Part shown: one piece after another, positions 18,224 through 58,672 of the stretch
How positions within the stretch are numbered: position 1 is the stretch's first letter
Layout: every line of letters starts with the position of its first letter
Virus record (IMG/VR): IMGVR_UViG_3300035698_013060
Location: 124,001-188,000 of that record
Direction: 5' to 3' (one strand)
Length of the DNA stretch: 64,000 nt
The notes under the pieces: model-generated
The model's input: the letters and a program-made list of their open reading frames with translations, nothing else
What the model was told of the DNA's origin: nothing
The model's database searches: none
Program-made: the position numbers and the translations under genes

Positions 18224-19138
18224 TTACTTGTCGTCCTTGGCGCCCTTCTTACTTGCCGAAAGCAGCATTCGACCGGCCGTCGAAGCCTGGGAGATGGCGG
18301 TGCTGTAGGCACTCACAACGGCACCAGCAACACGCTGTTTCCCGGCCAGCGACTTCTTCAGACCTTCGATTTCGGTCTTGGCTTTGGCAGCATCATCGCC
18401 GCCCTTGGCTGCCGAGGAAGCACCGGCCTTGGCCAGGCGCTGTCCGTTCTTGGCGTCGGTACCAGCCGAAGCAACGATGTTCTTGACATGCGCCAAGTAC
18501 TTCGTCGAGCCACTGAGGACGATGGAAACGCCCTGGTCGGTGAACTCTTGTTCGCCTTCAGCACCAAGGATCTTGGCCTTGATCTGGCCAGCAGTCTGGG
18601 ACTCAGCGTCGGGAGCGCCGATGGTATCGATGCTTTTGACAGCGGCGATGAGTTCGTTCGCGACGTTGTTACCGTCTGCGACGTTTGCATTGCCGTTCAT
18701 CTTGATGGACTTCACAGTCACATCGCCACGCACACCGTTCCACCACTTCTCTTGATTGCCGAACTTGGAGAAGAGCTTGGCGACGGTCTTCTTGAACCAA
18801 CCGCTGATGGCGTTCCAGATCTTCATGAAGAAATCGCCGATCGACTTGAAGACTTCTTTCACGCCTTCATCCAAGATCGACTGGTCTTCGTTCACGATCG
18901 CCTGATGCTCAAGGCTCGCGGCGTCGTTAATGATGGCACCCCAGGCAGTCTCCATCTCGAGTGCGACTTCGAGGATACCTTCGGCTCCTTCGCCGAACAC
19001 ATCGTAGTCTTCCTCGCGGATGCCCATTTCCTCAGAGATGTCAGTCATCTCCTTGAAAATCGGATCCTTCAGCATTTCGTCGAGGTTCACAGCGAGTCCG
19101 CCGCCACCGTTGCTTTTTGATTCGTTCAAGAACAGCAT
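18224..19138 (-). CDS. internal head (ejection) protein with acidic propeptide
   Basis: MLFLNE start; acidic N-terminal region with LNE/ISE/ALE/SLE/LDE sites, then the amphipathic F.KIW.AI..WF helix typical of jumbo-phage head proteins. Confidence 0.7.
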   Translation of the reverse strand: MLFLNESKSNGGGGLAVNLDEMLKDPIFKEMTDISEEMGIREEDYDVFGEGAEGILEVALEMETAWGAIINDAASLEHQAIVNEDQSILDEGVKEVFKSIGDFFMKIWNAISGWFKKTVAKLFSKFGNQEKWWNGVRGDVTVKSIKMNGNANVADGNNVANELIAAVKSIDTIGAPDAESQTAGQIKAKILGAEGEQEFTDQGVSIVLSGSTKYLAHVKNIVASAGTDAKNGQRLAKAGASSAAKGGDDAAKAKTEIEGLKKSLAGKQRVAGAVVSAYSTAISQASTAGRMLLSASKKGAKDDK

Positions 19139-30944: not shown

Positions 30945-31340
30945 TTACTTGAAATCCAACTGTTCTTTTACTAGCCCCTTTTTCAGGCCAGCAACTATAG
31001 CGGCTTTCTTGCCCTTCGCATCTGCGATCTGGTACAGACGGAATTCATCTGTGAAGACAACGAACTCCTCACCACTATCATCCTTCCGGAGGACAAAGTA
31101 GTAAGGAACTTCCTTACTGTCCGGATCTTCAGTGCACTCTTTGAAAAACTCTGCGACTGTCTCGGTGGTGACAGCCTTTTTCGTTGCAACCACAGCTATC
31201 CACGGATCATCATCATCGAGATCTTCAGTGACCTTCAAGTCAAACTTCTTCTTAGCTTTTTCAGGAGAGGAAAAGCAGCCGAGAACAGCTCCAAAGATAT
31301 GGTACTTGACGGGTTCTTCAGCTTTTTCGTAGAAGATCAT
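30945..31340 (-). CDS. hypothetical protein with MIFYE leader
   Basis: AGGA SD. Confidence 0.75.
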   Translation of the reverse strand: MIFYEKAEEPVKYHIFGAVLGCFSSPEKAKKKFDLKVTEDLDDDDPWIAVVATKKAVTTETVAEFFKECTEDPDSKEVPYYFVLRKDDSGEEFVVFTDEFRLYQIADAKGKKAAIVAGLKKGLVKEQLDFK

Positions 31341-31349
31341 GTCTGTTTC

Positions 31350-31889
31350 CTATATGTCCAGTCTGTCCTGTCGGTACTCCATGTAAACCTCTACTCGGGG
31401 CTTTTGGCTGTAAAACTTCTCACAACTCTCAAGAGTACACTGGTTGTCATCAACCCAGACCACCCCTTTCATCGCATCCAGTATGGACTTGACGTAGTTG
31501 TCGGTATCGGGGGTCTTCTCTGGTTGGAGATGACCTCTCTCCATGAGAACAAGTCTCGATCTAGCTGTGCCTTTCGGTGGCATCTTGAAGACCTCAGCCC
31601 ATACCCTGATCTGTCCCTGGATTGGTATGTAGTCCTCCGGGAGCTCTCTCCTGAGATAGTTCTGGAGTCCAGTCTGCCACTTTTCCAAGTCCTTGTCAAC
31701 GTACTTCCATCTAGCCCCATCCTTGTGCCTTTTGTACTGGACACACGGTCCAATGAGGACAAAGTCAAACGAGAACCAAGGGTTGTTCTCCTCCCAGTCG
31801 GTCCACATCTTGTCAGCCCGCGCCACGTCCTTATGATCGAACGTTGCCAGGACGGTTTTTCTTATAGCCGCGCCCTGTTCTGTCAACAT
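31350..31889 (-). CDS. rusA: RusA-family Holliday junction resolvase
   Basis: KTPDTDNYVKSILDAM..V.W.DDNQ, K.Y...PRVEV. Confidence 0.9.
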   Translation of the reverse strand: MLTEQGAAIRKTVLATFDHKDVARADKMWTDWEENNPWFSFDFVLIGPCVQYKRHKDGARWKYVDKDLEKWQTGLQNYLRRELPEDYIPIQGQIRVWAEVFKMPPKGTARSRLVLMERGHLQPEKTPDTDNYVKSILDAMKGVVWVDDNQCTLESCEKFYSQKPRVEVYMEYRQDRLDI

Positions 31890-31893
31890 TAGC

Positions 31894-32106
31894 TTACTCC
31901 TCGTTATCGTCAGTTTCTTCCTTCCGAGTCATCATTGTGCCGCACTTCGGACACTTCTTATCGGTACAGGGTTCTGTCCTATCGTGGTCCTCTGTATGAC
32001 CACACTTCGGACAAACACAAGTTCCACCAGGTCCAGCTGCGGCTTTTCCACCCATCCGACCACGACCCTTGGCCTCTTCAATGATGTCACTGTTGTAGAA
32101 TAACAT
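31894..32106 (-). CDS. small Zn-ribbon protein (GRGRMGG..AGPGG.CVCP.CG...PC...CPKCG) with MLFY leader
   Basis: AAGGAG SD; two CPKCG motifs. Confidence 0.8.
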   Translation of the reverse strand: MLFYNSDIIEEAKGRGRMGGKAAAGPGGTCVCPKCGHTEDHDRTEPCTDKKCPKCGTMMTRKEETDDNEE

Positions 32107-32118
32107 TACGTCTCTCCT

Positions 32119-33483
32119 TTAAAATATCCTATCTGCGATGTGTTCGACGACGTCCTTAGCACTGGTCACAGCAGAATCTGCCGCTCCAGTAAAAAGCGAG
32201 ACTTTGCCCATGATGGTTGCCCTGAGAGAGTCAGCGATATGTGCTTCCATCACATTAAGCCCGCACATGTTGTCCAGGAACGTCGAGAGTCCGATGTTCT
32301 GGCGAAGTAGGGCTTGGTTGGTGGCCACAGCCATGGACGGATACATGTCGGTTACAGTGGCCGTTACATCGATAACTCGGGGTAGTCCATTCGCCGCCCA
32401 ACTATTACTAGCTCCACCCCTAACAAAGCTAAAGCTGGTAAACATCCCCATGTCACAGCTCATTAAACCTGGAGAGTCCAGACGCACCAGCATTGGGGCC
32501 TTGAATGAATCAGGCTTGACCTGCCTGGGGAGAGCGAACGTCAGAAGCATCAAGAACGGGAGGTACACGAATTCGAAGATGGATTGAGGGTCTCCATACG
32601 GAGTCTCGAACTTGAAGCTCAGGTTATAGCTCTTCTCGAACTGAGAGCTCTTCCACATCTTCGGATAGATGATCTGCTCACCTTTCGAAGCCGCATCTTT
32701 CATCGTAGCATTAAGGCCAGTGATTACAGCTCCGATATCTTGAGAGGCGGCAGCAGCGGCTCCCATAGCACTCTGAGCCCTCTGAGCCATCGCTACTGCG
32801 CTGGCTCCAAAGTTACTTCCACCTTGTTCCAGTTCTCCAGTAGATCTTCTGAAGGCGAATCCTCGACTAAATGCCACTTCACGGGCTTTAGCTTGGATCT
32901 CTTTGGTAGACTGTGCCAACGAAGATTCGCTGACTTCATTACTGGCTGATTCCGACACAGTAGTAGCAGCTTCACAAAAGAAGTGAAGTCCATCGTTATG
33001 CCAGTTAGTCGTATCCAGAAAGGCCTCGATGTTATGTCCGAGAGAAAATCCAGCCAGTTTGGCTCCAATTTCGTTCAGGAGAACGTTGATGATTCGGCGG
33101 TACTCTGAAAAGTCCACATCAAAAGAATAGAACCTAACATCTCTCTCTTCATATTCCTTGTCGATTTTACCAGAATCCTCATCCTTGTAATAATCGACAT
33201 TCATTTTCGGAACCGGTTGTCCGTCATTCCCAAATGAACCTGTTTTCCAAAGACCGTCCATGTCACCATTAGGCTCGTTGCGAATCAGCTCCATCAAGGC
33301 TTTATACTTGGCATCCCTGATCGTTCCATCGTTAAAGCCAGGTCTTCCTGGGATGATATTGATTATGTTAGCGTTCTGGATAAACGTCTTGGCAAATACC
33401 CGGTAGTTGGGATCCGTAACTTGGGTGAATCCCAAGGGGAGCCCAACTATCGACCTATTAAGCCTCATTGGTGTCGTAGCCAT
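32119..33483 (-). CDS. baseplate/tube initiator protein (gp48-like)
   Basis: follows the tape measure gene; IIYPK.W..S.F..SY...FKF..PYGD, ALPRQ. Confidence 0.65.
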   Translation of the reverse strand: MATTPMRLNRSIVGLPLGFTQVTDPNYRVFAKTFIQNANIINIIPGRPGFNDGTIRDAKYKALMELIRNEPNGDMDGLWKTGSFGNDGQPVPKMNVDYYKDEDSGKIDKEYEERDVRFYSFDVDFSEYRRIINVLLNEIGAKLAGFSLGHNIEAFLDTTNWHNDGLHFFCEAATTVSESASNEVSESSLAQSTKEIQAKAREVAFSRGFAFRRSTGELEQGGSNFGASAVAMAQRAQSAMGAAAAASQDIGAVITGLNATMKDAASKGEQIIYPKMWKSSQFEKSYNLSFKFETPYGDPQSIFEFVYLPFLMLLTFALPRQVKPDSFKAPMLVRLDSPGLMSCDMGMFTSFSFVRGGASNSWAANGLPRVIDVTATVTDMYPSMAVATNQALLRQNIGLSTFLDNMCGLNVMEAHIADSLRATIMGKVSLFTGAADSAVTSAKDVVEHIADRIF

Positions 33484-33538: not shown

Positions 33539-36500
33539 TCATCCTTTCGCGATTCTGAGTATGGTCCCAGGAACTGCGAGGGAAGCGTTAGCTGTTTTAT
33601 CCCGACCTTCAGCATCTGATTGGCCCGGACCTTGTCCTCCGACAAACATATTGGGTCCAGACGACATAGAGCTATCTGTACTTCTCTTTTCACTCCCAGC
33701 CTCTGAGCTAGTTACCTTCAGGTTAACCGGGATTCCACTCTCGATGTTATCTGCCGTCCTATTGGTGTTGCTGGCGATAGCTTCAAGGAGTGTCAGCATC
33801 TTACTCTGATCGCCAACTATTGAGCTAGCGAGCATCTTAGTCTTGATGTCTTCCTTACGACTGAACATTTCTCTCGGAGACATCTCTACCGTTGGCCTGT
33901 TTGCCGTCGTCGGCATTTTAACAACCGAGACAGGAGTGGCTGTCGGAGAACGCTTCGGGATAGGTCCACCAGATGTACTAAGCTTCGATGACCCTAACAA
34001 CATATCCGGTTTTATCATACCCGGAGTCTTGTCCATGACAGGCTCGATCTCAGAGGCCTCTTCAGGACTCTCTGGCATACCCATCTTCCCAAAACCAGAC
34101 TGCATCTTGTTCCACTTAGCGTCCTTTTCAGCCTTGTGTTTCCTAAAGGTCTCTTCATCGACTGAAACGCCGTTGATTATGAAGGTTTTGCTGACCCTGC
34201 GCTTAACTCCATTTTCTGAAAGACCTCTGGTCTCAGGTTTAGCAACTGACTCAGAAGCACCTGTCGCCTGTTCATCGCTCTTCGGACCTGATCCCTTGAG
34301 CCTAGCAACGGACTCATTGAAGGCGGCAGTATCTTCTTCTCCGCCCTCTTCTTTACCAAACAGCTTGTTCCAGATGCCCTTGATAGCATTCTTAATTGCA
34401 TCCTTCAACATGCCGGGGATTTTAATGAAGAAGTCTTTGATCTTGCCCATGAACCCAAAGAACTTCTCCTTGATGTTAGCAACGAAGTCCTTGCCCATAT
34501 TCCAGATAGCTTTACCCCAGTCCTTGAATGCCCCGAGAATCTCTCCAGGAGCCTTGGCTATATTGCTGACCAGATTTTTTCCTGAGTCGAGTAGACCCTT
34601 TCCAAAACCTTTGATGAAAGCCCCAGCTGCAGCAGACTTCTGTTTGGTCATGTCCCAGGCTTTGCCGACAGCTTCCTTAGACTTGGTAAGTGCGGCCGAA
34701 GCCTTGTCCTTGATCTTATCGATCCCAGTCTTGTCATCTTCACGCTCTTCCTTATCGATCGTCTTACCAGCAGCCTTGGCTATGAGGTCGATCCTTCTCT
34801 TAGAGTAACTACTGATCTTCGAAGACTGTTGCAAGAGCCTGAGCTTATCCGGAGGAAGCTTACCGATGGCATCCCAATCCAAGACTTTCCACTTGCCCCA
34901 CCCGAAGGTATTCTTGAGTACTCCGACTTTCTCCAGTCCAACAGCAAGAGCATCACCCTCTTCTTCACTCTTAGAACCAGTAAGCCAACCATAAAGTTCA
35001 GAAATACCGTAAGTTGGTATTGCAGCACTACCAACGATACGAATAGCTTTGAAATCATCGGACTCTTTATCCTTGGCATCTTTATCGGCCTTTATAGCCT
35101 CTTTGGACTTGTCTTCTTCTTCCTTCTCTACGGTGCCCTTGGATTTGGCGATAGCTGCCATTTTCTCTTTGGTGGCCTTACCAAACTTACTCGACTTCGA
35201 GAGGAGATCTAGTTTATCTCCAGGTAGATTGCCGATAGCGTCCCAATCAGTGACTTTCCACTTTCCCCACCCAAGCGGATCTTTAACGACCCCTTCAGTA
35301 GTCAGAGCCTTAGCTAGTGCATCAGCTTCCCTGGTTTCCTTACCTCTGAAAAGCCACTTACCTATACTCGGAACTATCGACATAATGGATTTCCCAGCCA
35401 TCCATGCCAGCTTGAGACCAGCAATCGGGCTAAAGACTGCCTTGGCGAGCTTTTTACCGATACTTTCCTCTTCATCGAGGATAGCTTGTTCTCTCTCTTC
35501 TTCTTTGACAAATTCCCCAAACCCACGCTTCTTAGCGATATCTTTGAACTTATCTTTAGTCCTACCACTGAATAGGTTCGACCTAGTAAGCTCCATCAGA
35601 TTCGCTGGAGGCATCATCGCTACTGAATCCCAGTCCATGACCTTGTATTTGCCTGGGCCGAACGGATCTCTAACGACACCGCGTTCTTTCAGAGCTAGTA
35701 CAAGTGTATTGGCCTTGATCACTGATTCATCTGGAGCCATCACGAGTTTCCGAGCCTGCATTATCCCGCCGATTCCAGCGCCGACAGCAGCTCCTGCGGC
35801 AGTACCGGCTCCAGGGATGATCGATCCCAAAGTAGCACCGATCATAGCTCCTCGACCAGTAGATCCGACCATTCCAGCAGCCGCTTCACCAACCCCACCC
35901 TCTTTAGTACGAAAAACCTTTGCCAGAGTGCCTCTCTTCTTAGCACTCCCAGTCAACATTCCAGATATCATCCCCTCAACTTCACCAACTCCAGCTTCTT
36001 CAGAACCCCTGTGTCCTGTGAATCCACCTCTGGCGAGTTCTACACCAGCAAGAATCGCAGACAGAGCAGCTCCACCGCCAACCTTAGTGAGACCCTTACC
36101 CATGGTCTTAATGCCACCCTTACCAAACATCTTAAGTAGAGCACGCTCACCAGCCCGTTTGGCTCCATACTTCATTATACTTCGGCCTGCTCGCCAAACA
36201 GCTTTCCCCTTCCGACCAATGTTCCTGATTCTTCCACCTTTCCTCTGAGCTGGAACGCCAACGGTATCTAATACATCATCGTCAGCATCATCGTCAGCGG
36301 CAGTCATTCCCCCTATAGCTGCAGTGTCAGCTAAGTCTCCACTATCAGTAACATCTCTCTCTTCCTTGACCTTATCACGACGTTTAGCAACTCTAGCTGC
36401 CCTTGCAGCTTTTCTGTCCTTGAGCTTGGCGTCCATCCTAGTACTATCACGATCTCTGTCAGCCTCTTCAGCAATAGCCTTTCTCTCACTAGACTCTGCC

Positions 36501-39500
36501 TTTTGGTCCATAGTCTCGTCTTTTTCGTCAGCTGCTCGCTCTGTATCAGCCGTCCTGGTAACTAACGTTACTGATCTGACGATCTCAACCTGTTGGACTG
36601 AAGTAGCTTCTGCTTTTGTCGGGGTAGAAGTCTCTCTTGGAGAAGGATTGGTCATAGACGCAGAACCGCCAAACACGGCGCTAGCTCCTTCAGAGATCGC
36701 AGATGCAGTTCCTCTGACAGCCCTTCCTATGAAACCTCCGATTCTTCCCAAGACCCCCGGACCACTAGAACCAGCTGAGACTTCATCTTCACTCAAATCT
36801 CCCAAGCCAGGTCCTTCAACTCCGTACATCGGAATGGCTACTGAACCTATAATCTTAACCAGCTGGACTTTACCCCCGCTAGCAAGACCGCTTACAGCAT
36901 CAGCTCCTATTCCAAAGATACTACCAATACCTCGACCGAGGGCTTTGACACCATCCCAGAGTCCGTTAACGACCTTAGTCACACCGCTCCATAGGGCTGG
37001 AATGACATCATCCTTCAAAGCACCCCATAGACCTGTAGTAACAGCCTTTACACCATTCCAGAGTTCCGGAACTATAGCTTGGGCTGCACTCCACATCGTC
37101 TTAGTAACAGACACACCAGCATCCCAGAGACCCTTAGCGGCTATTTCAGCACCCTTCCAAAGAGTCTTCGTTATGGCAGTGACACCTTTCCATAGCTCAG
37201 GTACTACAGTTTGGACAGCCTTCCAAGCTTCTCCCGTCACCGTCTTGGTGACGTCCCATACTTCTGTCGCGATGGCCTTGACCCCTTCCCAAATATCCTG
37301 AGCTCTGTCCTTGATCCATGAGAATGAATCAGTAACGATGTCTTTAATCTTGTTCATCAGACGCTTCGGAGCATCCAGGACAGCCTGAATTCCATCCTTG
37401 AGCTTTCGTCCAATATCCTTGAACGGAGAAGTCAGCTTATCGAACATTCGACCGAAGAAGCCCCGATGCTTCCCAAGGGCACTCTCATCGACTTCATCCT
37501 TGTCAATGCCAAGCTTCTTAACGAGCCTAGCGAGATTCTTTCCAGTACCTGACAAGTGATCCTTCATGAAGTTGAGCATATCTTTGGTGTGACGCTCAGT
37601 CTCCACCATAGAACCAAAACCTTGAGCAGGACTTGCAGTTGTTCCGGATGCAGAAGCTGAAGTAGCACTTGCAAGAGCCGGAGCTTGAGCAGCAGGAGAA
37701 GCTTTAAGAGATGCTTCCTTTCTAGCTTGTCTAGCATCAGCTTTTTCTTTGAGTTTGATATCCAAATCTGCATCTCTAGTGGCTCTCGATGTCCTACGCC
37801 TCTCATCTCTATCCACTCTAGAAGTGCGACGATCTCTAGCAGCAGCATCTCTTTCAGTTATCCTAGCAGCAGCTATCGAAGCTCGCTCCTTAGACTGGGA
37901 ATCAATACCCGTCTTTTCTACAGTGGAAGTAGTGCTAGTATCTTGTTTTTCTGTCGGGATGGGTGGAGGCTTGGCGGATTCAGTAGCAGTAACTTCAGCA
38001 GTAGGTTCGTTTACTGTTCCATCCTTAGAAGTGACTTTTCCAGCCAACTTATCAGGAACACCCATACGCTTCTGCCATTCAGATTGAGCTTCTTCCGTTC
38101 TAGTTTCCGTCAGCTTAGGAGCAGCCTTCTCAGTTGAGGTACCACCGACTCCCATATGCTTCTGCCATGCTGTCTGAGTTTCCGTCCCTTCAGGTTTAAG
38201 AGACGTAGCAGCTCTAGCAGCAGCACCCTTTCTAGCGGCCTGTTTCTCTCTAAGGGCTGCAGCCTTCTCTTGTAAGAAGGAAACCCCCCTCTTCATTATT
38301 CCTCCAAGCCCTTTACCAAGCCAGTCCCGGAAGCTTTTTATATGGGCCCCGAAAGGCTCTAGGAAGTTCTCTTTGATCATCTCTCCGAACGGCTTACCGA
38401 AACTAGTTTCGAACATGGTACCCATGAACTCACTAACGGCACTCATCCCTTCCTTGATACCGTTTTTCACGATATCTGTCAGAGAGTTGAATCCTGCCTT
38501 CATCTCCTCCATGAATGGGTCAAAGACCCCCTTCATCGGATCAATGACGTTCTTACGAGTCCAGTCGGCGGTAGCTGTCCATGTCTCTGTAAAGAAAGTC
38601 CTGGCGGGATCTATGATATTCTCACCTACCCAGACGTTCAGAGCATCGAATTTTCCACCCTCACCGAATAGACCACCATCACCAGTCTTTTCGTTACCGA
38701 AGAGGTAATCAGTGGCCTTGGTGTAAATGGCTGTGATCTTTCCTTCTTCACCAAAGAGGTAATCTTGGACCTTCTGACTTCCAAGAGCATAACCGGCCCC
38801 GGCTCCAATGATCATGCCGACCGGACCAAATCCAGCCAGACTTGCACCGATACCGCCCAGGCCTGCGCCCCACAATTCTCCCTCATGATCCTTCATCCAG
38901 ATCTTAGCTTTACCAATAACTCCAGGATCACCTTCTTCGTCTGGATTACCGAAGAGCCAATTCTGGACTTTGTCAGTCTGTAAGGCATAGCCCGCACCAG
39001 CCCCGACAATCATACCAACAGGACCACCGAACATATACCCGGCAGTACCGCCGCCAAGCATTTTAGCGTTACCTTGAACCCAGTCTCCAGCCTTCTTGAT
39101 AATCCCTGGATCTCCATCATCACCCTCTTTACCGAACAGCCAGTTCTTAACCTTGTCAGTAGTCAAGGCATAGCCCGCACCAGCTCCAACGATCATGCCA
39201 ATGGGACCTCCGATGATACCAAGAGAAGCACCTCCACCAAAGGTAGCAGCTACTTTACCCATGTGCGGTTGGGCTTTCTTCCAAAACTTGTTAAGAGCCC
39301 CTTCCTTCCCAAAGAGAGACTCTCTAACGTTAGTCAGAGCTGTACCAGTTTGTTTCAAAGCTCTTGAGGCGAAGTTACTAACTGGATCTAGGACTTTGTC
39401 CTTCATCCAAGCTTTAATACCCCCACCTTCTTTGTCACCAGACCACAGTTCACTGAGTCCTTTACTAACGCCTTCGAAACTTCTTTGTGCGAAACCCTTG

Positions 39501-42208
39501 ATTGGATCCCATACTTGGGTCTGAAGAGAGTCTTTGAGACCACCTTTCTTAGACCAGAAGTCAGTGATAGGTTTGAAAGCCCCAATCACTGCATCAGCAC
39601 CACCACCGTCCTGAGACCACCAACTCTTGATCCCATCGACCATACCAGTCCACTTATTCTTAATCCAATCAAAAGCAATCCGGACAGGTTTAGTCATCCT
39701 ATCCATCAAGGAACCACCCTCTGGAGCATCAGGTTTGCCGAAGAACCATCTACCAACTTGATCTCCAACTCTATCAGTCATGTCAGCAATGGCTTGAATT
39801 GGATGCAAGAGCATCTCTTTGATGGACATCCTGTCGGCTTCTCGACGATCTTCTTGTTCCGTGTACTCTTCGTTAGGACCGATGGCTTCAGCAGCCTTAT
39901 TAACAGACGTTACTCTATCTAGTACTTCTTGTGCGTCTTTACCGTCCTTGAAACGCTTGTCGATCTCTCCAGACTTAGTCTTACGGATCTCACCGGTTTC
40001 AAGCTTGGCTTGGATTTCTTTCGCCTTCTCCATATCAGCCTTCTGATCTTGGAAGAAGGAGAGTAATGGATCTGGAGGAGGCTCTGGAAGAGCAGCGATA
40101 GAGGCTTCAGAGGCCCTATTGATCCTACCCTCTCTAGCAGCAGCTGAGACATCAATCCTCATCGCTCGACCATTTTTATCTCTGATCGTCGGCTCACCGC
40201 CATTTGCGCGGACAATATCCCTGAGAAGTCCGGGGATAGTATGGATGATAGCGCTTCTAACGTCGGCATCAAACGGAACTGGCTTGACTCTCCCGACGGC
40301 TTGCGCTGAAGAGACACTTCCCCCGACTTCGTAGGCCTGGATGTCACGGGAAGACCTGATGCTAGATATTTCTTGCTCCAGATCCCTGGACTCTCGGACA
40401 ATCTTTTTCTCGTCTTTGTCAAGCCCACCCTTAGCTTGTCTCTTCCTAAATTTGTCTTCCCCAGTCTGCCTTCTGATATCGTCCAATCGTCTCTGGGCTT
40501 CGATCTCCCTGGAAGAGACCATACTGGAGTCAGACATTACTTGTCTGAAAGCAGAGCCCTTGATATCACTTCCAACCTTATCACCGAATTCTGCACCGCT
40601 AGCCCTGAAGGCAAGTTTCTCTTTTTGTAACTGTGTCAGTCCGGAGACCCCAAGGCCCTTAACAGACTTGTTCCAAGCATCTACGAGCTCGACATTCAAG
40701 CCCGGAGCTGAAAGATCCCCGACAGACTTACCACTAGCAGCCATCTCAGCGCTACGAATCTTTTCCAGTTCTTTTTCAGCTACTTTTCTCTGTTCTGGAT
40801 TGAATTTGAAGGAATCCAGGACATTCCTACTCATATCTGTAGTAAAGCCTACACCACGTGTGGCGGCACTTCTCTCAACATTTAGTTGATCGACGACCTC
40901 TGTTCGAGTCCTCATCTTCCCGGTACCGTAGTCGAAGATCTGTTCATCTCCCTCAGTACCACCATTAATGGCATTGAGAATAAGGGAGAGGTACTTCGGG
41001 ATCACCTCAGTGATCGCCTTTTTGGTATGGGCATCGAACGGAACAGCTTTATCCAGAGTCCCCAATCTAGCGTCTACCCTGGTGTCGTCTCTGTCCATCC
41101 CGAGAAACCTACCAGCACCCCTCTTCAGAGTGTTGAGTACGCCATCATCAGTGATATTAGCCCACTCTTCAAGCTGAAGCATAAGTGTGGCCGGGAGTCC
41201 ACCGATGATGTTATCCATCCTCTGGAATGACTTCTGTAGACTTTCCGGGAAGAATTTCTCAGCGAGGGAGTCCATTGCCAACTCGAGAGGATTCGTGAGC
41301 ATGTCCTTGAACATGTTCATATCTTCGAGTGTAGTCTTGATCCTATCACTGACAGTCCTGACATAGTTTTCCGGACTGAAACCACCGTACTCAGTAAAGA
41401 TCTTATCATACTTGGTTTCAATACCATCACTAGCTCTGCCATCAACAGTCAAGCCAAGTGCCCCTAGATGGGCCTGAGATGCCCTATTGATCTCCTGAAG
41501 CTGGACTGCCATCTCGGAGATACCCGTCATAAGGGAACTCCGGTGCGAATCCAAACCAGTCTGATGGTTGTAGCCCGCTATTACTGCATGTTTCTGTTCT
41601 TGAATCAGACTCCGGATATTGTCCAAGATCGTATTGGTTGCAGTGATTCCTCTACCAAGAGCTCTACTGCTACCAATGACGGCGGAGGCTTGTACTGTAC
41701 CAGCAGCACCGATAGCCGTACCGACCTTACTTCCAAGTGAGGAAGCTTCCGATGAGATGGAAAACTTGTTGGAGACGTTAGTCACTCTGTTATCAGAGAC
41801 TTGAACTGGAGTAGAAGAATCTCCTCCGAAGTCTCCCATATCAATGTCGCTGTCACCCCCGTCGTCGCCTCTACCTACCATATCAGAAGTATCAAAATCT
41901 GACATCATATCGTCGTCGAAACCGAGAGCGGAAGCCATAGCGGCTCCCTTTTCCTCTTCCGACCTATAGAACTTCCCAGTACGAACGGCCTCCGTGGTGT
42001 TCTTCACCATGGCAGCCCCTACGTCCTTGACGACGTTCTCTTTGATCAGGCTTGTGACTTCGGATGCGACCTCTTTGACACTATCGCCCGAGGAGAAGAC
42101 CTCCTCGATCAGCTCGGCTGTTTGACCGAACATTTGAGTCTTGATCGCCCCGGCGGCCGCAAAGCCCAAACTTTTAGCAGCGTTCTTTGTAAAGCTGAAC
42201 GCACCCAT
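33539..42208 (-). CDS. tape measure protein (2889 aa)
   Basis: very long, Ala/Gly-rich; FD..T...I...IP..L motif twice, Gly-zipper repeats, 11-residue Trp repeats. Confidence 0.85.
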   Translation of the reverse strand: MGAFSFTKNAAKSLGFAAAGAIKTQMFGQTAELIEEVFSSGDSVKEVASEVTSLIKENVVKDVGAAMVKNTTEAVRTGKFYRSEEEKGAAMASALGFDDDMMSDFDTSDMVGRGDDGGDSDIDMGDFGGDSSTPVQVSDNRVTNVSNKFSISSEASSLGSKVGTAIGAAGTVQASAVIGSSRALGRGITATNTILDNIRSLIQEQKHAVIAGYNHQTGLDSHRSSLMTGISEMAVQLQEINRASQAHLGALGLTVDGRASDGIETKYDKIFTEYGGFSPENYVRTVSDRIKTTLEDMNMFKDMLTNPLELAMDSLAEKFFPESLQKSFQRMDNIIGGLPATLMLQLEEWANITDDGVLNTLKRGAGRFLGMDRDDTRVDARLGTLDKAVPFDAHTKKAITEVIPKYLSLILNAINGGTEGDEQIFDYGTGKMRTRTEVVDQLNVERSAATRGVGFTTDMSRNVLDSFKFNPEQRKVAEKELEKIRSAEMAASGKSVGDLSAPGLNVELVDAWNKSVKGLGVSGLTQLQKEKLAFRASGAEFGDKVGSDIKGSAFRQVMSDSSMVSSREIEAQRRLDDIRRQTGEDKFRKRQAKGGLDKDEKKIVRESRDLEQEISSIRSSRDIQAYEVGGSVSSAQAVGRVKPVPFDADVRSAIIHTIPGLLRDIVRANGGEPTIRDKNGRAMRIDVSAAAREGRINRASEASIAALPEPPPDPLLSFFQDQKADMEKAKEIQAKLETGEIRKTKSGEIDKRFKDGKDAQEVLDRVTSVNKAAEAIGPNEEYTEQEDRREADRMSIKEMLLHPIQAIADMTDRVGDQVGRWFFGKPDAPEGGSLMDRMTKPVRIAFDWIKNKWTGMVDGIKSWWSQDGGGADAVIGAFKPITDFWSKKGGLKDSLQTQVWDPIKGFAQRSFEGVSKGLSELWSGDKEGGGIKAWMKDKVLDPVSNFASRALKQTGTALTNVRESLFGKEGALNKFWKKAQPHMGKVAATFGGGASLGIIGGPIGMIVGAGAGYALTTDKVKNWLFGKEGDDGDPGIIKKAGDWVQGNAKMLGGGTAGYMFGGPVGMIVGAGAGYALQTDKVQNWLFGNPDEEGDPGVIGKAKIWMKDHEGELWGAGLGGIGASLAGFGPVGMIIGAGAGYALGSQKVQDYLFGEEGKITAIYTKATDYLFGNEKTGDGGLFGEGGKFDALNVWVGENIIDPARTFFTETWTATADWTRKNVIDPMKGVFDPFMEEMKAGFNSLTDIVKNGIKEGMSAVSEFMGTMFETSFGKPFGEMIKENFLEPFGAHIKSFRDWLGKGLGGIMKRGVSFLQEKAAALREKQAARKGAAARAATSLKPEGTETQTAWQKHMGVGGTSTEKAAPKLTETRTEEAQSEWQKRMGVPDKLAGKVTSKDGTVNEPTAEVTATESAKPPPIPTEKQDTSTTSTVEKTGIDSQSKERASIAAARITERDAAARDRRTSRVDRDERRRTSRATRDADLDIKLKEKADARQARKEASLKASPAAQAPALASATSASASGTTASPAQGFGSMVETERHTKDMLNFMKDHLSGTGKNLARLVKKLGIDKDEVDESALGKHRGFFGRMFDKLTSPFKDIGRKLKDGIQAVLDAPKRLMNKIKDIVTDSFSWIKDRAQDIWEGVKAIATEVWDVTKTVTGEAWKAVQTVVPELWKGVTAITKTLWKGAEIAAKGLWDAGVSVTKTMWSAAQAIVPELWNGVKAVTTGLWGALKDDVIPALWSGVTKVVNGLWDGVKALGRGIGSIFGIGADAVSGLASGGKVQLVKIIGSVAIPMYGVEGPGLGDLSEDEVSAGSSGPGVLGRIGGFIGRAVRGTASAISEGASAVFGGSASMTNPSPRETSTPTKAEATSVQQVEIVRSVTLVTRTADTERAADEKDETMDQKAESSERKAIAEEADRDRDSTRMDAKLKDRKAARAARVAKRRDKVKEERDVTDSGDLADTAAIGGMTAADDDADDDVLDTVGVPAQRKGGRIRNIGRKGKAVWRAGRSIMKYGAKRAGERALLKMFGKGGIKTMGKGLTKVGGGAALSAILAGVELARGGFTGHRGSEEAGVGEVEGMISGMLTGSAKKRGTLAKVFRTKEGGVGEAAAGMVGSTGRGAMIGATLGSIIPGAGTAAGAAVGAGIGGIMQARKLVMAPDESVIKANTLVLALKERGVVRDPFGPGKYKVMDWDSVAMMPPANLMELTRSNLFSGRTKDKFKDIAKKRGFGEFVKEEEREQAILDEEESIGKKLAKAVFSPIAGLKLAWMAGKSIMSIVPSIGKWLFRGKETREADALAKALTTEGVVKDPLGWGKWKVTDWDAIGNLPGDKLDLLSKSSKFGKATKEKMAAIAKSKGTVEKEEEDKSKEAIKADKDAKDKESDDFKAIRIVGSAAIPTYGISELYGWLTGSKSEEEGDALAVGLEKVGVLKNTFGWGKWKVLDWDAIGKLPPDKLRLLQQSSKISSYSKRRIDLIAKAAGKTIDKEEREDDKTGIDKIKDKASAALTKSKEAVGKAWDMTKQKSAAAGAFIKGFGKGLLDSGKNLVSNIAKAPGEILGAFKDWGKAIWNMGKDFVANIKEKFFGFMGKIKDFFIKIPGMLKDAIKNAIKGIWNKLFGKEEGGEEDTAAFNESVARLKGSGPKSDEQATGASESVAKPETRGLSENGVKRRVSKTFIINGVSVDEETFRKHKAEKDAKWNKMQSGFGKMGMPESPEEASEIEPVMDKTPGMIKPDMLLGSSKLSTSGGPIPKRSPTATPVSVVKMPTTANRPTVEMSPREMFSRKEDIKTKMLASSIVGDQSKMLTLLEAIASNTNRTADNIESGIPVNLKVTSSEAGSEKRSTDSSMSSGPNMFVGGQGPGQSDAEGRDKTANASLAVPGTILRIAKG

Positions 42209-46503: not shown

Positions 46504-48168
46504 TTAGATTACTTCTTCGAGCTCGGCCTGCATCGTCCCTGCCGTGTTAGACACGGCATTAGGAAGATCACAGTTGTACCATACGGTTCCCTGAGGATCG
46601 ACCGATCCACCAAGGCCATCCAAGATGGTGTACTCATCCAGAGTATCATCCTGATCAGCCCTGTGATCGAAGTTGAGAGAACCAGAAGGACTCTTCGAGA
46701 GGTTCGTACATTCCAACTTCATTACATCCAAGACGGAGGTCTCTATGGCAACCTCTCTGTTAGGCCATGCTGAGATGGTGAGCGTCCTAAGGACGAATCC
46801 TCCGATGATGTAGTTCACACCATTGGTAGGAACGTTGATGACCTTTCCAGCCAGGTTGACGGCATCGAAGCTCCCCCACGCGTGGGATCCCTTCACGTCG
46901 TCATCATGGACCTGAAGATCTCTTGTCCAGACCATCGGTCCCCCTGCGAAAGCTGCTCCTTGGAACGTCCCAGACGGAGCGACCATTGTGGGAGGCTGGA
47001 GGAATTCCTGATTTCCAGTGACGGTGATGATATGATCTTGTGCGACAGTACCAGCATTACCACCACTTCTGAGTCTGGCAGCCGGAACGGCGATATCTAC
47101 CGTCATGTCAACATGTGCAATCTGGATGATGACATTTTCCACGGTGGATGCATCGTTAGCTGTTCTTGTCGCAGTGGCTCTGAGATTGTCAACGGAAACA
47201 TTGTAGTTTCCGGAGATTCTCTCAACTGTCTTGCTCGCTTCCACGACTGAAGGATTGGTAATGAGTAGCTCTGCACTGGGCGAGTCGAATAGTACAACAT
47301 CCAGATCTGAGGTGGTGATTACCACTGAAGCCGTCTCAGAGTCCTTGAGGGCTTCCTGTGCTCCGGGGTATGTGGTAATCCCGAATGAGACCGTTGGATG
47401 CAGATTGTTGAGCGGAAGGGTGTTCCCTGTTTCAAAGGCTGCCCCAAGGCTTCCACTGGCGTCTACGGCTTGAATCCGTGCAGTGAGGTTTTGTAGCGTC
47501 GTCCCTCTGTTGGCGATCGTAACCTGAATAGTCGTGTTCGTCGTTGATGCAAAGCTGTGTGAGGATGCTTGGCATGCACCAAAGCCTTCGACCTCGATCC
47601 CTATCATGGGCTCAACAGAATCGATGACGAGGTTGACTACGTCTCCTTCCTTGAGTTCTGTCTGAGTTCCAGGAAGTGCTCCAAACAGAGCTCCTGATAC
47701 TTCAGGTCCAACTTGGATGGTAACGTCACACGCGTTGATCGGACCATCAGAATGGATGGCTGTTACATCTCCGGAAGCTCCAAGAGTGATGTCCACTGTA
47801 CCAGCCCACATCGGTTGATCCGGGAGCTGAGTAAGTGTCACTGAGATACCGTTGACCGTGACTGAAGGTAACAGAGTTGTTCCTCCACTGATAGCCATGA
47901 CGCTAACGGCAATTTCACCGTCGTCAGAGGTACAAGAGATAAGCTCCAATCCGTCTGATCTGGTGACCTTTGAGCCAACATTTCCACCTGCTGCAGGAGC
48001 GATGTCTGTGATGAATATCCCACCAGAGATTCCACCAGCCGTCAGTCCTGCCATGATGGCGTCAATGGACCTAACGGCGTTGTTGAGAATCTGTCCCCAG
48101 TTGTCACTGTCGCCACCAATGTCTGGGAGCTCGATATCGTAATTCGGCGTGTGTTCGTTCTGTGCCAT
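46504..48168 (-). CDS. tail fibre / Ig-like beta-rich structural protein
   Basis: TPNY.I.LP.....W...LN anchor; YPG.Q.ALK..E; T/V/S-rich. Confidence 0.7.
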   Translation of the reverse strand: MAQNEHTPNYDIELPDIGGDSDNWGQILNNAVRSIDAIMAGLTAGGISGGIFITDIAPAAGGNVGSKVTRSDGLELISCTSDDGEIAVSVMAISGGTTLLPSVTVNGISVTLTQLPDQPMWAGTVDITLGASGDVTAIHSDGPINACDVTIQVGPEVSGALFGALPGTQTELKEGDVVNLVIDSVEPMIGIEVEGFGACQASSHSFASTTNTTIQVTIANRGTTLQNLTARIQAVDASGSLGAAFETGNTLPLNNLHPTVSFGITTYPGAQEALKDSETASVVITTSDLDVVLFDSPSAELLITNPSVVEASKTVERISGNYNVSVDNLRATATRTANDASTVENVIIQIAHVDMTVDIAVPAARLRSGGNAGTVAQDHIITVTGNQEFLQPPTMVAPSGTFQGAAFAGGPMVWTRDLQVHDDDVKGSHAWGSFDAVNLAGKVINVPTNGVNYIIGGFVLRTLTISAWPNREVAIETSVLDVMKLECTNLSKSPSGSLNFDHRADQDDTLDEYTILDGLGGSVDPQGTVWYNCDLPNAVSNTAGTMQAELEEVI

Positions 48169-48195
48169 TTCTTTACTCCTTTACGTCGATAAAAC

Positions 48196-48345
48196 TTATG
48201 CTCCGAAGTTCTTGGAGGCAAAACTGGGTGAGTCGGAGCCGTCGTCTCCGTAGTGGAGCTCGTTTCCGCTTACTCCAATGATACTCTGCCAATCAGCTCC
48301 AGGTTGGTTCACATCAGGAATTTCTGTGGTATAACTCGGAGGCAT
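48196..48345 (-). CDS. 49-aa mini-protein MPPSYTTEIPD...GNELHYGDDGSDSPSFASKNFGA (not in ORF track)
   Basis: AAGGAG SD; paralogous to the adjacent 44-aa ORF. Confidence 0.75.
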   Translation of the reverse strand: MPPSYTTEIPDVNQPGADWQSIIGVSGNELHYGDDGSDSPSFASKNFGA

Positions 48346-48369
48346 AATAACGACTCCTTCTTACGGGTC

Positions 48370-48504
48370 TTAGCCCCCGAAGTTTTTGTCCTTGAAACTC
48401 TCTTCGTCGGAACCATTGACTCCTCCATGGAGCTCAGTTCCCTCAATAGTATGATCAGTCTTGTATTGCTCGAGGTATTCTGATCTGGTGACGTCGTCAG
48501 CCAT
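48370..48504 (-). CDS. 44-aa mini-protein MADDVTRSEY...GTELHGGVNGSDEESFKDKNFGG (not in ORF track)
   Basis: AAGGAG SD; paralogous to the adjacent 49-aa ORF. Confidence 0.75.
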   Translation of the reverse strand: MADDVTRSEYLEQYKTDHTIEGTELHGGVNGSDEESFKDKNFGG

Positions 48505-48515
48505 TTCGTCTCTCC

Positions 48516-58120: not shown

Positions 58121-58672
58121 TTATCCCTTGATGGACTGGTAGAACTGTTCCTTCATGGCAGCCACTTCGGCCTTGCGCTTCGGATCCTTGGTCGCTTTCT
58201 CGAGGTCATCCAAAGCTCTTTCTGCTTTCTTGACCTGCTTCGTGGCGTCCTTGCTGGCGAAGAAAGCTGCAGTCCCTACTCCAACGAGCGCGATCATGTT
58301 CAAGGTCAGACCGTAAATGGAGTAGAAGAAAGCGAGAACGAGAGCAGCTTGGAGAGCACCGATGGTAGCCAGAATGGCGACCATGATATATACTCCAACC
58401 GGAACGAGAAGCAAAGCGATTGTCGCCTTTTGAACTCCATCAGCTGTCTTATTGGCCTTCTTAGCCTTCGACATAAAGTCGTAGACCTTCGCTCCGAGGA
58501 CGTCGATGGATTCTTCGGTGAGAACTCCATTCTCGACAATGAGCGAACCCTTTTCAAAGGGCTCCAACTCAGCATCTTCCATAAGAGTTCTACCCTCTTC
58601 TGATTCGAAGAAGACCACACACTCTTCAATGGACAGATTGGCTTCACCGGCAGTTCCTTGGTAAAACAGCAT
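58121..58672 (-). CDS. head/ejection protein with MLFY leader, acidic propeptide and hydrophobic helices
   Basis: AGGAG SD; SIEE/LME/IVE/LTEE sites; roughly 60-aa hydrophobic segment. Confidence 0.65.
   Translation of the reverse strand: MLFYQGTAGEANLSIEECVVFFESEEGRTLMEDAELEPFEKGSLIVENGVLTEESIDVLGAKVYDFMSKAKKANKTADGVQKATIALLLVPVGVYIMVAILATIGALQAALVLAFFYSIYGLTLNMIALVGVGTAAFFASKDATKQVKKAERALDDLEKATKDPKRKAEVAAMKEQFYQSIKG

What the first reader, a model, noticed from the sequence alone, without database searches (positions are those of the whole stretch)
31894..32106. Host-type Zn-ribbon peptide apparently captured and fitted with the putative packaging leader
Seen: MLFYNSDIIEE followed by AKGRGRMGGKAAAGPGGTCVCPKCGHTEDHDRTEPCTDKKCPKCGTMMTR. 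Established (pattern recall): GRGRMGG..AGPGG.C.CP.CG....H....PC....CPKCG..M.R is a small cellular family common in anaerobic bacteria and archaea, often beside or fused to NifB/NifX-like and DUF134 proteins. Inference: a cellular metal-binding peptide has been repurposed as an injected virion protein (decoy or regulator), which also hints at an anaerobic host.
Basis: partly seen in the sequence, partly recalled or inferred. Interest (0 to 1): 0.65.

Follow-up and report, generated by a model that had tools for sequence, protein, structure and literature searches.

The report
Leader-tagged metal-binding peptide in jumbo phage
A giant phage carries a 70-residue six-cysteine metal-binding peptide of a type otherwise typical of anaerobic bacteria and archaea, refitted with an 11-residue N-terminal tag that at least 15 unrelated proteins of the same phage share and that resembles the tag phage T4 uses to load proteins into its head.

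Summary
Window 31894-32106 (-) is a 70-aa ORF with a strong ribosome-binding site, lying in a tail/virion operon of a complete 241-kb jumbo phage. Residues 12-61 belong to an uncharacterised Cys6/His zinc-ribbon family with no Pfam model. It occurs in at least 247 species genomes, mostly anaerobes and DPANN archaea, either alone or fused to DUF134, NifX-like, cation-efflux or ferredoxin domains. None of 166 cellular or metagenomic homologues has the MLFY start or the acidic tail.

The MLFY start is real. Eleven to fourteen ORFs begin with it against 0.03 expected, with varied synonymous codons, on proteins unrelated to each other. It is usually followed by [LI]xE within 22 residues.

The only known relative of the phage (66% GC against 48%) keeps a leader-bearing, tandemly duplicated version in the same slot.

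It occurs on 107 IMG/VR contigs, mostly as a sister subtype embedded in capsid, prohead-protease and portal-MuF proteins.

Capture of a cellular-type module and the fitting of the leader are well supported. Loading into the virion, cleavage of the leader, injection and an anaerobic host remain inference.

The parts
31894..32106 (-). 70-aa ORF: leader, Cys6/His zinc-ribbon module, acidic tail and stop codon
32074..32106 (-). Codons 1-11, MLFYNSDIIEE: the shared N-terminal leader, ending in IIE/IEE before Ala12
31924..32073 (-). Codons 12-61: type-A module AKGRGRMGG..AAGPGG-CxCxxC-x5-H-x5-C-x4-CxxC-G..M.R. The six invariant Cys are C30, C32, C35, C47, C52 and C55; H41 is nearly invariant.
31897..31923 (-). 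Codons 62-70, KEETDDNEE: an acidic tail absent from the cellular stand-alone forms and longer in the related phage
32112..32119 (-). Ribosome-binding site AAGGAGAG, overlapping the stop of the upstream gene
32119..33483 (-). Upstream gene in the same operon: 454-aa virion structural protein (phrog_20401, 2e-78). This was the anchor used to find the related phage.
33539..42208 (-). 2889-aa tape measure protein, heading the same co-directional gene block
31350..31889 (-). Downstream gene: RusA-like Holliday-junction resolvase. Its start lies 4 nt after the stop of the Zn-ribbon gene.
30945..31340 (-). 131-aa ORF that begins MIFYEKAEE, a leader variant. In the related phage the same slot holds a non-homologous 153-aa ORF beginning MTLFYDGDLLGEA.
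18224..19138 (-). 304-aa leader-variant ORF (MLFLNESK..NLDE) matching a PHROG annotated as virion structural protein
58121..58672 (-). 183-aa leader ORF (MLFYQGTAGEANLSIEE) with three predicted membrane segments, next to baseplate genes

Best explanation
The gene encodes a small metal-binding protein. Its core (residues 12-61) is a Cys6/His zinc-ribbon module of the subtype that normally occurs in cellular genomes. There it stands alone or is fused to DUF134 regulators, NifX-like proteins, cation-efflux transporters or ferredoxins.

An ancestor of this jumbo-phage lineage acquired the module. It lost the cellular glycine-rich N-terminus (MPRGDGTGP...) and gained two phage-specific parts:
- an 11-residue N-terminal leader (MLFYNSDIIEE) that at least 15 otherwise unrelated proteins of the phage share;
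- an acidic C-terminal tail.

These steps are shown by sequence comparison.

The following is inferred. The leader works like the capsid targeting sequence of the T4 internal proteins: it docks the protein into the assembling virion, and the maturation protease removes it after the [LI]-x-E site, here between Glu11 and Ala12. The roughly 59-residue metal-loaded peptide then travels in the particle and enters the host with the DNA.

What it does there is the weakest step. Candidate roles are binding metal, binding DNA, or interfering with host regulators that use the same module.
For: A real, conserved gene:
- Ribosome-binding site and tight operon packing.
- 74 homologues with six invariant Cys.
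- AF2 core pLDDT of 83-90 with a zinc-ribbon topology.
- A syntenic orthologue in L173 despite 66% GC against 48%.

A cellular-type module:
- At least 247 species genomes carry it.
- Pfam confirms fusions to DUF134, Nitro_FeMo-Co, Cation_efflux+ZT_dimer and Fer4.
- An archaeal operon reads DUF134, peptide, CbiA/Fer4 twice, then NifX-like.
- The module scores 79.8 bits on the cellular profile (cellular members' median 80.8) against 57.0 on the phage-fusion profile.
- After its own orthologue, its nearest neighbours are cellular or metagenomic peptides.

A portable, protein-level leader:
- 11-14 MLFY starts plus MLFL and MIFY variants, against 0.034 expected.
- Synonymous codons vary and the upstream DNA is not conserved.
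- The cargo proteins are not paralogues.
- It is absent from all 166 cellular or metagenomic homologues.
- In the related phage the orthologue starts MSIFYDGKMLEE|AGG, and a non-homologous gene in the neighbouring slot starts MTLFYDGDLLGE|A.

Resemblance to the T4 CTS:
- [LI]xE lies within residues 5-22 in 10 of 15 leader proteins against 45 of 301 others (Fisher 1.8e-5).
- T4 IPII and IPIII start MKTYQEFIAE|A.
- The T4 CTS is a 10-20-residue propeptide that loads proteins into the prohead and is then cut off (PMC5694885).
- In L173 both tandem modules are preceded by xxE|AGGRGRMGG.

Link to the virion:
- The gene lies in the operon with the tape measure, a virion structural protein and an M15 peptidase.
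- Two leader-variant proteins match PHROGs annotated as virion structural protein.
- Other cargo looks effector-like: a DUF676-type hydrolase, a PrsW-like protease and membrane proteins.
- In other phages, homologous modules sit inside major capsid, prohead-protease and portal-MuF proteins.
Against: - There is no proteomic, transcript or structural evidence that the protein is in the virion or that the leader is cut.
- The gene lies among tail genes and next to a RusA resolvase, not among head genes.
- No T4-type prohead protease was detected (PF03420), and three candidate ORFs gave nothing. The supposed cleavage specificity is therefore unanchored.
- phiKZ-type giant phages cleave at S/A/G-x-E and use much longer propeptides (PMC5694885).
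- Five of 15 leader proteins lack [LI]xE. The leader region is generally rich in Glu and Asp, which inflates such motifs.
- Three leader proteins are membrane proteins.
- Other leader genes lie beside DNA-polymerase and RNA-polymerase genes.
- The nearest cultured relative, BpSp, shows no such leader in the 146 kb examined.
- Most head-protein fusions belong to the sister subtype B, not the subtype found here.
- Only one related phage fragment exists, so conservation of the leader rests on two genomes.
Confidence: 0.45

Rival explanations
1. The peptide is an intracellular phage protein that is not packaged. It would be an auxiliary metal-binding or regulatory factor acting in the infected cell. 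The MLFY leader would then serve another purpose common to a set of phage proteins, such as controlled turnover, docking to a phage chaperone or compartment, or translation efficiency.
For: - Cellular relatives are tied to metal handling and regulation.
- Leader genes are scattered, some beside DNA-polymerase and RNA-polymerase genes.
- Some cargo proteins are membrane proteins.
- The phage encodes its own Cpn60-type chaperonin.
- No protease or virion evidence was found.
Against: - The leader is selected at the protein level, not the RNA level.
- It ends in a protease-like [LI]xE site far more often than other N-termini do.
- All four leader genes in the window lie in virion modules.
- Two leader variants match virion-protein PHROGs.
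Confidence: 0.3
2. The peptide is a tail-associated component or a tail assembly factor, for example a small metal-binding piece of the baseplate or tail tip, or a chaperone of the tape measure, rather than a protein inside the head.
For: It lies directly downstream of the tape measure gene and a virion structural gene, in a block with an M15 peptidase and near baseplate and sheath genes. This order is conserved in the related phage.
Against: - Homologous modules in other phages are attached to head proteins, not tail proteins.
- A RusA gene and variable cargo genes sit in the same block, so position says little about function.
- The leader is shared with genes far from the tail genes.
Confidence: 0.12
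3. The peptide is a zinc-ribbon DNA-binding accessory of the adjacent RusA resolvase.
For: The genes are 4 nt apart and adjacent in both phages. The module has an Arg/Gly-rich arm, and cellular versions are fused to the DNA-binding DUF134 domain.
Against: - The whole block is syntenic, so adjacency carries little weight.
- RusA acts without such a partner in other systems (established knowledge).
- This reading gives no reason for the shared leader or for the tandem duplication.
- No complex prediction was run.
Confidence: 0.07
4. The ORF is not a gene.
For: It is short, and no Pfam family reaches its cut-off.
Against: - A strong ribosome-binding site.
- Family E-values down to 4e-15 with six invariant Cys.
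- A conserved syntenic orthologue at a very different GC content.
Confidence: 0.01

Closest known systems
Capsid targeting sequence (CTS) of the phage T4 internal proteins IPI/IPII/IPIII and Alt
   Same: - Both are short N-terminal peptides of about 10-20 residues, shared by different proteins of one phage.
- Both have an aromatic residue at position 4, then polar or acidic residues, two hydrophobic residues, and a Glu followed by a small residue. T4 has MKTYQEFIAE|A. This peptide has MLFYNSDIIEE|A, and its orthologue has MSIFYDGKMLEE|A.
- Both end in the [LI]-x-E pattern that the T4 prohead protease cuts (PMC5694885 and established knowledge).
   Different: - The resemblance is one of pattern only; no homology can be demonstrated.
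- The phage is not T4-like, and no gp21-type protease was detected.
- The number of cargo proteins is larger and they are more diverse, including membrane proteins.
- Neither cleavage nor packaging has been shown.
Cellular GRMGG/AGPGG Cys6-His zinc-ribbon peptides. They have no Pfam model, are often auto-named 'ferredoxin', and their N-terminal part sometimes gives a faint DUF5320 match.
   Same: - The same module with every invariant residue.
- A profile score equal to that of cellular members.
- A similar size.
   Different: - The phage copy lacks the MPRGDGTGP glycine-rich N-terminus.
- It has the leader and an acidic tail, which no cellular form has.
- Its neighbours are phage tail genes and RusA, not DUF134, NifX-like, CbiA-Fer4 or cation-efflux genes.
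Subtype-B zinc-ribbon module (RGEGxGVGGxRQGDGGA-CVCPKCG...M.GK) embedded in phage head-assembly proteins
   Same: It is a homologous Cys6/His core. It shows that phages repeatedly place this module in proteins that work inside the procapsid: the N-terminal regions of major capsid proteins, XkdF/S78 prohead proteases, DUF2213, and portal-MuF fusions.
   Different: - It is a different subtype: the window module scores 57 bits on its profile against 80 on the cellular profile.
- It is a domain within large proteins, not a stand-alone leader-tagged peptide.
Propeptides of head and ejection proteins in phiKZ-like giant phages (SPN3US, phiKZ, 201phi2-1)
   Same: They are giant-phage proteins that are loaded into the head, trimmed after Glu by the prohead protease, and ejected into the host (PMC5694885).
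   Different: - Those propeptides are mostly 80-160 residues long and not a shared tetrapeptide-led tag.
- Their cleavage motif is S/A/G-x-E (PMC5694885).
- This phage is only distantly related to them, at about 30% identity in one virion protein to AR9/PBS1/phiR1-37-type phages.

Membership tests
Type-A GRMGG/AGPGG Cys6-His zinc-ribbon peptide family (unnamed) | Core pattern G-R-M-G-G ... A-G-P-G-G-x-CxCxxC-x5-H-x5-C-x4-CxxC-G-x2-M-x-R, with six invariant Cys | tested here: met
   In the alignment of 75 sequences all invariant and nearly invariant columns are present in the window protein.
Type-A GRMGG/AGPGG Cys6-His zinc-ribbon peptide family (unnamed) | A profile score in the range of bona fide cellular members and above the score on the sister subtype's profile | tested here: met
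   79.8 bits against a cellular median of 80.8. On the subtype-B profile it scores 57.0, where cellular members have a median of 55.2.
Type-A GRMGG/AGPGG Cys6-His zinc-ribbon peptide family (unnamed) | Genomic association or fusion with DUF134, NifX-like, CbiA-Fer4 or cation-efflux genes | tested here: not met
   The neighbours are the tape measure, a virion structural protein and RusA. The cellular context was confirmed elsewhere.
Type-A GRMGG/AGPGG Cys6-His zinc-ribbon peptide family (unnamed) | Binds metal through the six Cys and the His | not testable with these tools
   The model gives only a zinc-ribbon or rubredoxin-like topology. No solved relative exists.
T4-type capsid targeting sequence | A short N-terminal peptide shared by otherwise unrelated proteins of one phage | tested here: met
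   11-14 MLFY starts plus variants, against 0.034 expected. The cargo proteins are not paralogous. The leader is also present in the related phage.
T4-type capsid targeting sequence | Ends at a prohead-protease site, [LI]-x-E followed by a small residue | tested here: met
   IIE/IEE at residues 8-11, followed by Ala12. The motif is enriched in leader proteins, 10 of 15 against 45 of 301.
T4-type capsid targeting sequence | The phage encodes a gp21-type prohead protease that removes the leader | tested here: inconclusive
   PF03420 was not found in the genome, and three candidate ORFs had no PDB relatives. Giant-phage proteases are known to be too divergent for such searches (PMC5694885).
T4-type capsid targeting sequence | The cargo is present in the virion in processed form | not testable with these tools
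   Support is indirect only: the operon context and two PHROG matches to virion structural proteins.
Pfam zinc-ribbon families (Zn_ribbon_3, Zn_Ribbon_1, Zn_Tnp_IS91 and others) and DUF5320 | A score above the curated gathering cut-off | tested here: not met
   The best score is 18.9 bits against cut-offs of 25-27. There is no DUF5320 hit, and all NCBIfam scores are far below their cut-offs.

The most novel reading that the evidence does not exclude
The MLFY...[IL][IL]xE leader is a general loading tag of an uncultivated jumbo-phage lineage. It lets the phage plug arbitrary captured genes into the particle and inject them. Its cargo includes a cellular metal-binding peptide, a hydrolase, a protease, membrane proteins and, in the sister phage, a different gene in the same slot. 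On this reading, the injected Zn-ribbon peptide targets host metal or Fe-S regulatory circuits that use the same module (DUF134, NifX-like, cation efflux).
Probability: 0.2. Interest if true: 0.8.

Novelty: new variant of a known kind. Interest (0 to 1): 0.55.

Why it matters
If the leader is a loading tag, this phage would be the first giant phage outside the T4 group with a short, recognisable, transferable tag for loading proteins into the virion. The tag would mark a ready-made list of about 15-19 candidate injected proteins. The two related phages already show different cargo in the same genomic slot.

The Zn-ribbon peptide is the clearest case of a foreign, cellular-type domain placed behind that tag. 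That makes it the natural test object for the tag's function.

Separately, the work shows that one uncharacterised Cys6/His module links three settings:
- metal-related cellular proteins: DUF134 regulators, NifX-like proteins and cation-efflux transporters;
- the interior proteins of many phage capsids;
- this jumbo phage.

None of this is described in the literature that was searched.

Tried and rejected
- Pfam, NCBIfam and PHROGs on the peptide gave only generic zinc-ribbon noise below the cut-offs.
- The PDB sequence search and Foldseek gave no specific relative.
- tblastn against 50,697 phage records found no match for the peptide.
- The closest cultured relatives share only about 30% identity in a virion protein.
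- A search for close relatives in IMG/VR using the 454-aa protein found none.
- Word searches with the 304-aa leader protein and with RusA found only the phage itself and the single relative.
- Bacillus phage BpSp showed no N-terminal motif enrichment in the 146 kb examined. Only gp272 has a loosely similar start, MKSLFFED.
- The idea that the leader is a DNA or RNA cassette was rejected because synonymous codons vary and the upstream DNA differs.
- The idea that the leader proteins are paralogues was rejected: only one weak pair was found.
- The prohead protease was not found.
- The sigma-70 promoter and terminator scans gave counts no different from shuffled sequence.
- Literature searches for MLFY, DUF5320 and DUF134 with zinc found nothing relevant.
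- The large representative-protein search was not used because the word search had already settled the family.

Full report
**Observation.** An AAGGAGAG ribosome-binding site lies five bases before the ATG and overlaps the stop of the upstream gene. The next gene starts four bases after this gene's stop.

The window is bases 124001-188000 of a single 241,176-bp virus record that has direct terminal repeats and is rated complete. The record is a jumbo phage, only distantly related to cultured phages. It shares about 30% identity in one virion protein with the AR9, PBS1, phiR1-37, BpSp and Staphylococcus S6-type phages.

**Surroundings.** The gene sits in a long co-directional block on the minus strand:
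- a 2889-aa tape measure protein;
- a 454-aa virion structural protein (phrog_20401, 2e-78);
- the Zn-ribbon gene;
- a RusA resolvase;
- a 131-aa ORF;
- a 330-aa ORF;
- an 88-aa ORF;
- a 247-aa M15 peptidase.

Sheath and baseplate genes lie nearby. This is therefore a tail or virion module, not a head module. Sigma-70 promoter and terminator scans gave counts no different from shuffled sequence.

**The family.** No Pfam, NCBIfam or PHROG model reaches its cut-off, and no solved structure is related. The word search found 74 homologues of 49-120 residues with E-values down to 4e-15. Their shared core is GRMGG..AAGPGG-CxCxxC-x5-H-x5-C-x4-CxxC-G..M.R, with six invariant cysteines and a nearly invariant histidine.

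AlphaFold models residues 29-61 with a pLDDT of 83-90 as a zinc-ribbon. The leader, the glycine-rich arm and the tail come out disordered.

A scan of one genome per prokaryotic species found at least 247 genomes with the module. They include:
- DPANN archaea, Thermoplasmatales and methanogens;
- Anaerolineae, Acidobacteriota, sulfate reducers and syntrophs;
- Thermotogae, Atribacterota and Clostridia.

In these genomes the module either stands alone, typically starting MPRGDGTGP, or forms the C-terminus of another protein. The fusion partners are DUF134, NifX-like (Nitro_FeMo-Co), cation-efflux and ferredoxin proteins. One archaeal contig shows the operon DUF134, peptide, two CbiA/Fer4 ATPases and a NifX-like gene. 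The closest metagenomic hit lies in a bacterial context next to rubrerythrin.

The module is also common in viruses. 107 IMG/VR contigs encode it, and 61 of the 80 ORFs examined are larger than 130 residues. Of 20 such proteins scanned:
- five carry an XkdF-type prohead protease domain;
- one carries an S78 prohead protease;
- one carries DUF2213;
- two are major capsid proteins with the module in their N-terminal region;
- one is a Mu-type portal fused to MuF.

The others carry a DNA methyltransferase, a ligase, ChaB or DUF6582. Most of these viral modules form a distinct subtype, RGEGxGVGGxRQGDGGA-CVCPKCG...M.GK.

Profiles built from the cellular set and from this viral subtype separate the two cleanly. 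The window module scores 79.8 bits on the cellular profile, where cellular members have a median of 80.8, and 57.0 on the viral profile. Its nearest neighbours after its own orthologue are cellular or metagenomic peptides. So the phage copy is of the cellular subtype. A minority of that subtype also occurs on viral contigs, some inside head proteins (L008, L018, L032). The donor and the direction of transfer are therefore not resolved.

**The leader.** Across the genome, 11 ORFs of a crude 316-gene call begin with MLFY. The count is 14 if three further MLFY ORFs are included: one that the crude call started at a later codon, and two that have an in-frame start codon upstream of the MLFY codon. 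Two more begin MLFL and two or three begin MIFY. From amino-acid composition, 0.034 MLFY starts are expected (Poisson 2e-24). Internal LFY tripeptides occur at the expected rate.

Four observations point to a portable signal that acts at the protein level:
- Leucine, phenylalanine and tyrosine codons vary among the copies, and the upstream DNA is not conserved.
- Beyond the first 25 residues the proteins are unrelated, apart from one weak pair.
- [LI]xE occurs within residues 5-22 in 10 of 15 leader proteins against 45 of 301 others (Fisher 1.8e-5). The region is also generally acidic, which weakens this figure.
- None of 92 cellular ORFs and none of 74 metagenomic homologues has a leader-like start, and none of 47 cellular stand-alone forms has an acidic tail.

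**The related phage.** A metagenome scan with the 454-aa protein found the same phage again, plus one 3.3-kb fragment of a relative, L173. That relative shows 67% identity in the 454-aa protein and has 66% GC against 48% here. Gene order is the same.

Its Zn-ribbon gene encodes 143 residues with two tandem modules and starts MSIFYDGKMLEE followed by AGGRGRMGG. The second module is again preceded by a Glu-Ala junction (SSVNE, then AGGRGRMGG), and the protein ends in a long poly-Glu tail.

The spacing from Phe-Tyr to Glu-Glu-Ala is identical in the two phages. The slot after RusA holds non-homologous genes in the two phages, 131 aa against 153 aa. Both begin with the leader: MIFYEKAEE and MTLFYDGDLLGEA.

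Three conclusions follow:
- The leader is conserved across large nucleotide divergence.
- The leader-plus-module fusion predates the split of the two phages.
- The leader accompanies changing cargo.

Word searches found no further relatives.

**How it most likely works.** T4 IPII and IPIII begin MKTYQEFIAE followed by Ala. This is the capsid targeting sequence, a 10-20-residue propeptide that loads proteins into the prohead and is then cut off by the prohead protease (PMC5694885). That the cut follows [LI]-x-E is established knowledge.

The leader here has the same length and the same layout: an aromatic residue at position 4, polar or acidic residues, two hydrophobic residues, Glu, and then a small residue.

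Five lines of evidence bear on its function:
- this resemblance to the T4 sequence;
- the virion-operon context;
- two leader-variant proteins that match PHROGs annotated as virion structural protein;
- the effector-like nature of other cargo;
- the recurrent placement of the homologous module in procapsid-interior proteins of other phages.

Taken together, the best reading is a virion-loaded peptide that is trimmed by the protease. I put this at a little under one half.

The evidence against this reading:
- There are no proteomic data.
- No protease was identified.
- The gene lies in a tail neighbourhood rather than a head neighbourhood.
- Giant phages of the phiKZ type use long propeptides and a different cleavage motif (PMC5694885).
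- Three leader proteins are membrane proteins.
- Some leader genes lie beside polymerase genes.
- BpSp shows no such leader in the 146 kb examined.

What the mature peptide does is not known. Its cellular partners point to binding of a metal or metal cluster and to regulation.

**Comparison and novelty.** The peptide is a member of the unnamed cellular-type Zn-ribbon family by sequence, but not by genomic context. It differs from every cellular member in having the leader and the acidic tail. The leader works like a T4 CTS on paper, but membership cannot be claimed. I found no description of either feature in the literature searched. I rate the finding a new variant of known kinds and moderately interesting. 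The capture and the refitting are solid; the packaging and injection story is a testable hypothesis.

**Limits.** No alternative genetic code was needed.

Noticed in passing
Whole genome (G000). In the window: 18224-19138(-), 30945-31340(-), 31894-32106(-) and 58121-58672(-): About 15-19 ORFs of the phage start with MLFY, MLFL or MIFY, followed by an acidic stretch and usually [LI]xE. The cargo proteins are mutually unrelated. They include a DUF676-like hydrolase, a PrsW-like protease and three membrane proteins.
   Followed up: yes
L173:2031-2492 compared with window 30945-31340(-): The slot between RusA and the 330-aa gene holds non-homologous genes in the two related phages, 153 aa against 131 aa. 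Both carry the leader, so the slot looks like an exchangeable cargo position.
   Followed up: partly
L173:1063-1494: The orthologue in the related phage has two tandem Zn-ribbon modules. Each is preceded by a Glu-Ala junction before GGRGRMGG, and the protein ends in a run of nine Glu.
   Followed up: partly
IMG/VR loci L008-L087, for example L014:9857-12493, L077:2141-4675, L018:8188-11109 and L024:6826-7818: A sister subtype of the module (RGEGxGVGGxRQGDGGA-CVCPKCG...) is embedded in major capsid proteins, XkdF/S78 prohead proteases, DUF2213 proteins and portal-MuF fusions on dozens of viral contigs. It appears to be an undescribed, widespread domain of the capsid interior.
   Followed up: partly
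L011:9398-10153: One IMG/VR contig carries three consecutive stand-alone Zn-ribbon paralogues of 81, 79 and 73 aa.
   Followed up: no
Cellular loci L097, L098, L105, L113, L123 and L133: In DPANN archaea the module forms the C-terminus of both a cation-efflux transporter and the adjacent DUF134 protein. This suggests a metal-sensing pair made of a regulator and a transporter.
   Followed up: partly
window 33539-42208(-): A 2889-aa tape measure protein, very long even for a jumbo myovirus.
   Followed up: partly
window 9115-10821(-): A phage-encoded Cpn60/TCP-1-type chaperonin (Pfam 8e-29).
   Followed up: no
Genome 47013-48563(+), 232901-233662(+) and 236607-238607(+), covered by L003 and L007: Split multisubunit RNA-polymerase beta-type genes, as in phiKZ/AR9-like phages. 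Several leader-bearing genes are interleaved with them.
   Followed up: no
L168:2992-4098 (Bacillus phage BpSp gp272): The distant homologue of the 304-aa leader-variant protein starts MKSLFFEDTEL, a loosely similar N-terminus. BpSp otherwise shows no enrichment of the motif in the 146 kb examined.
   Followed up: partly
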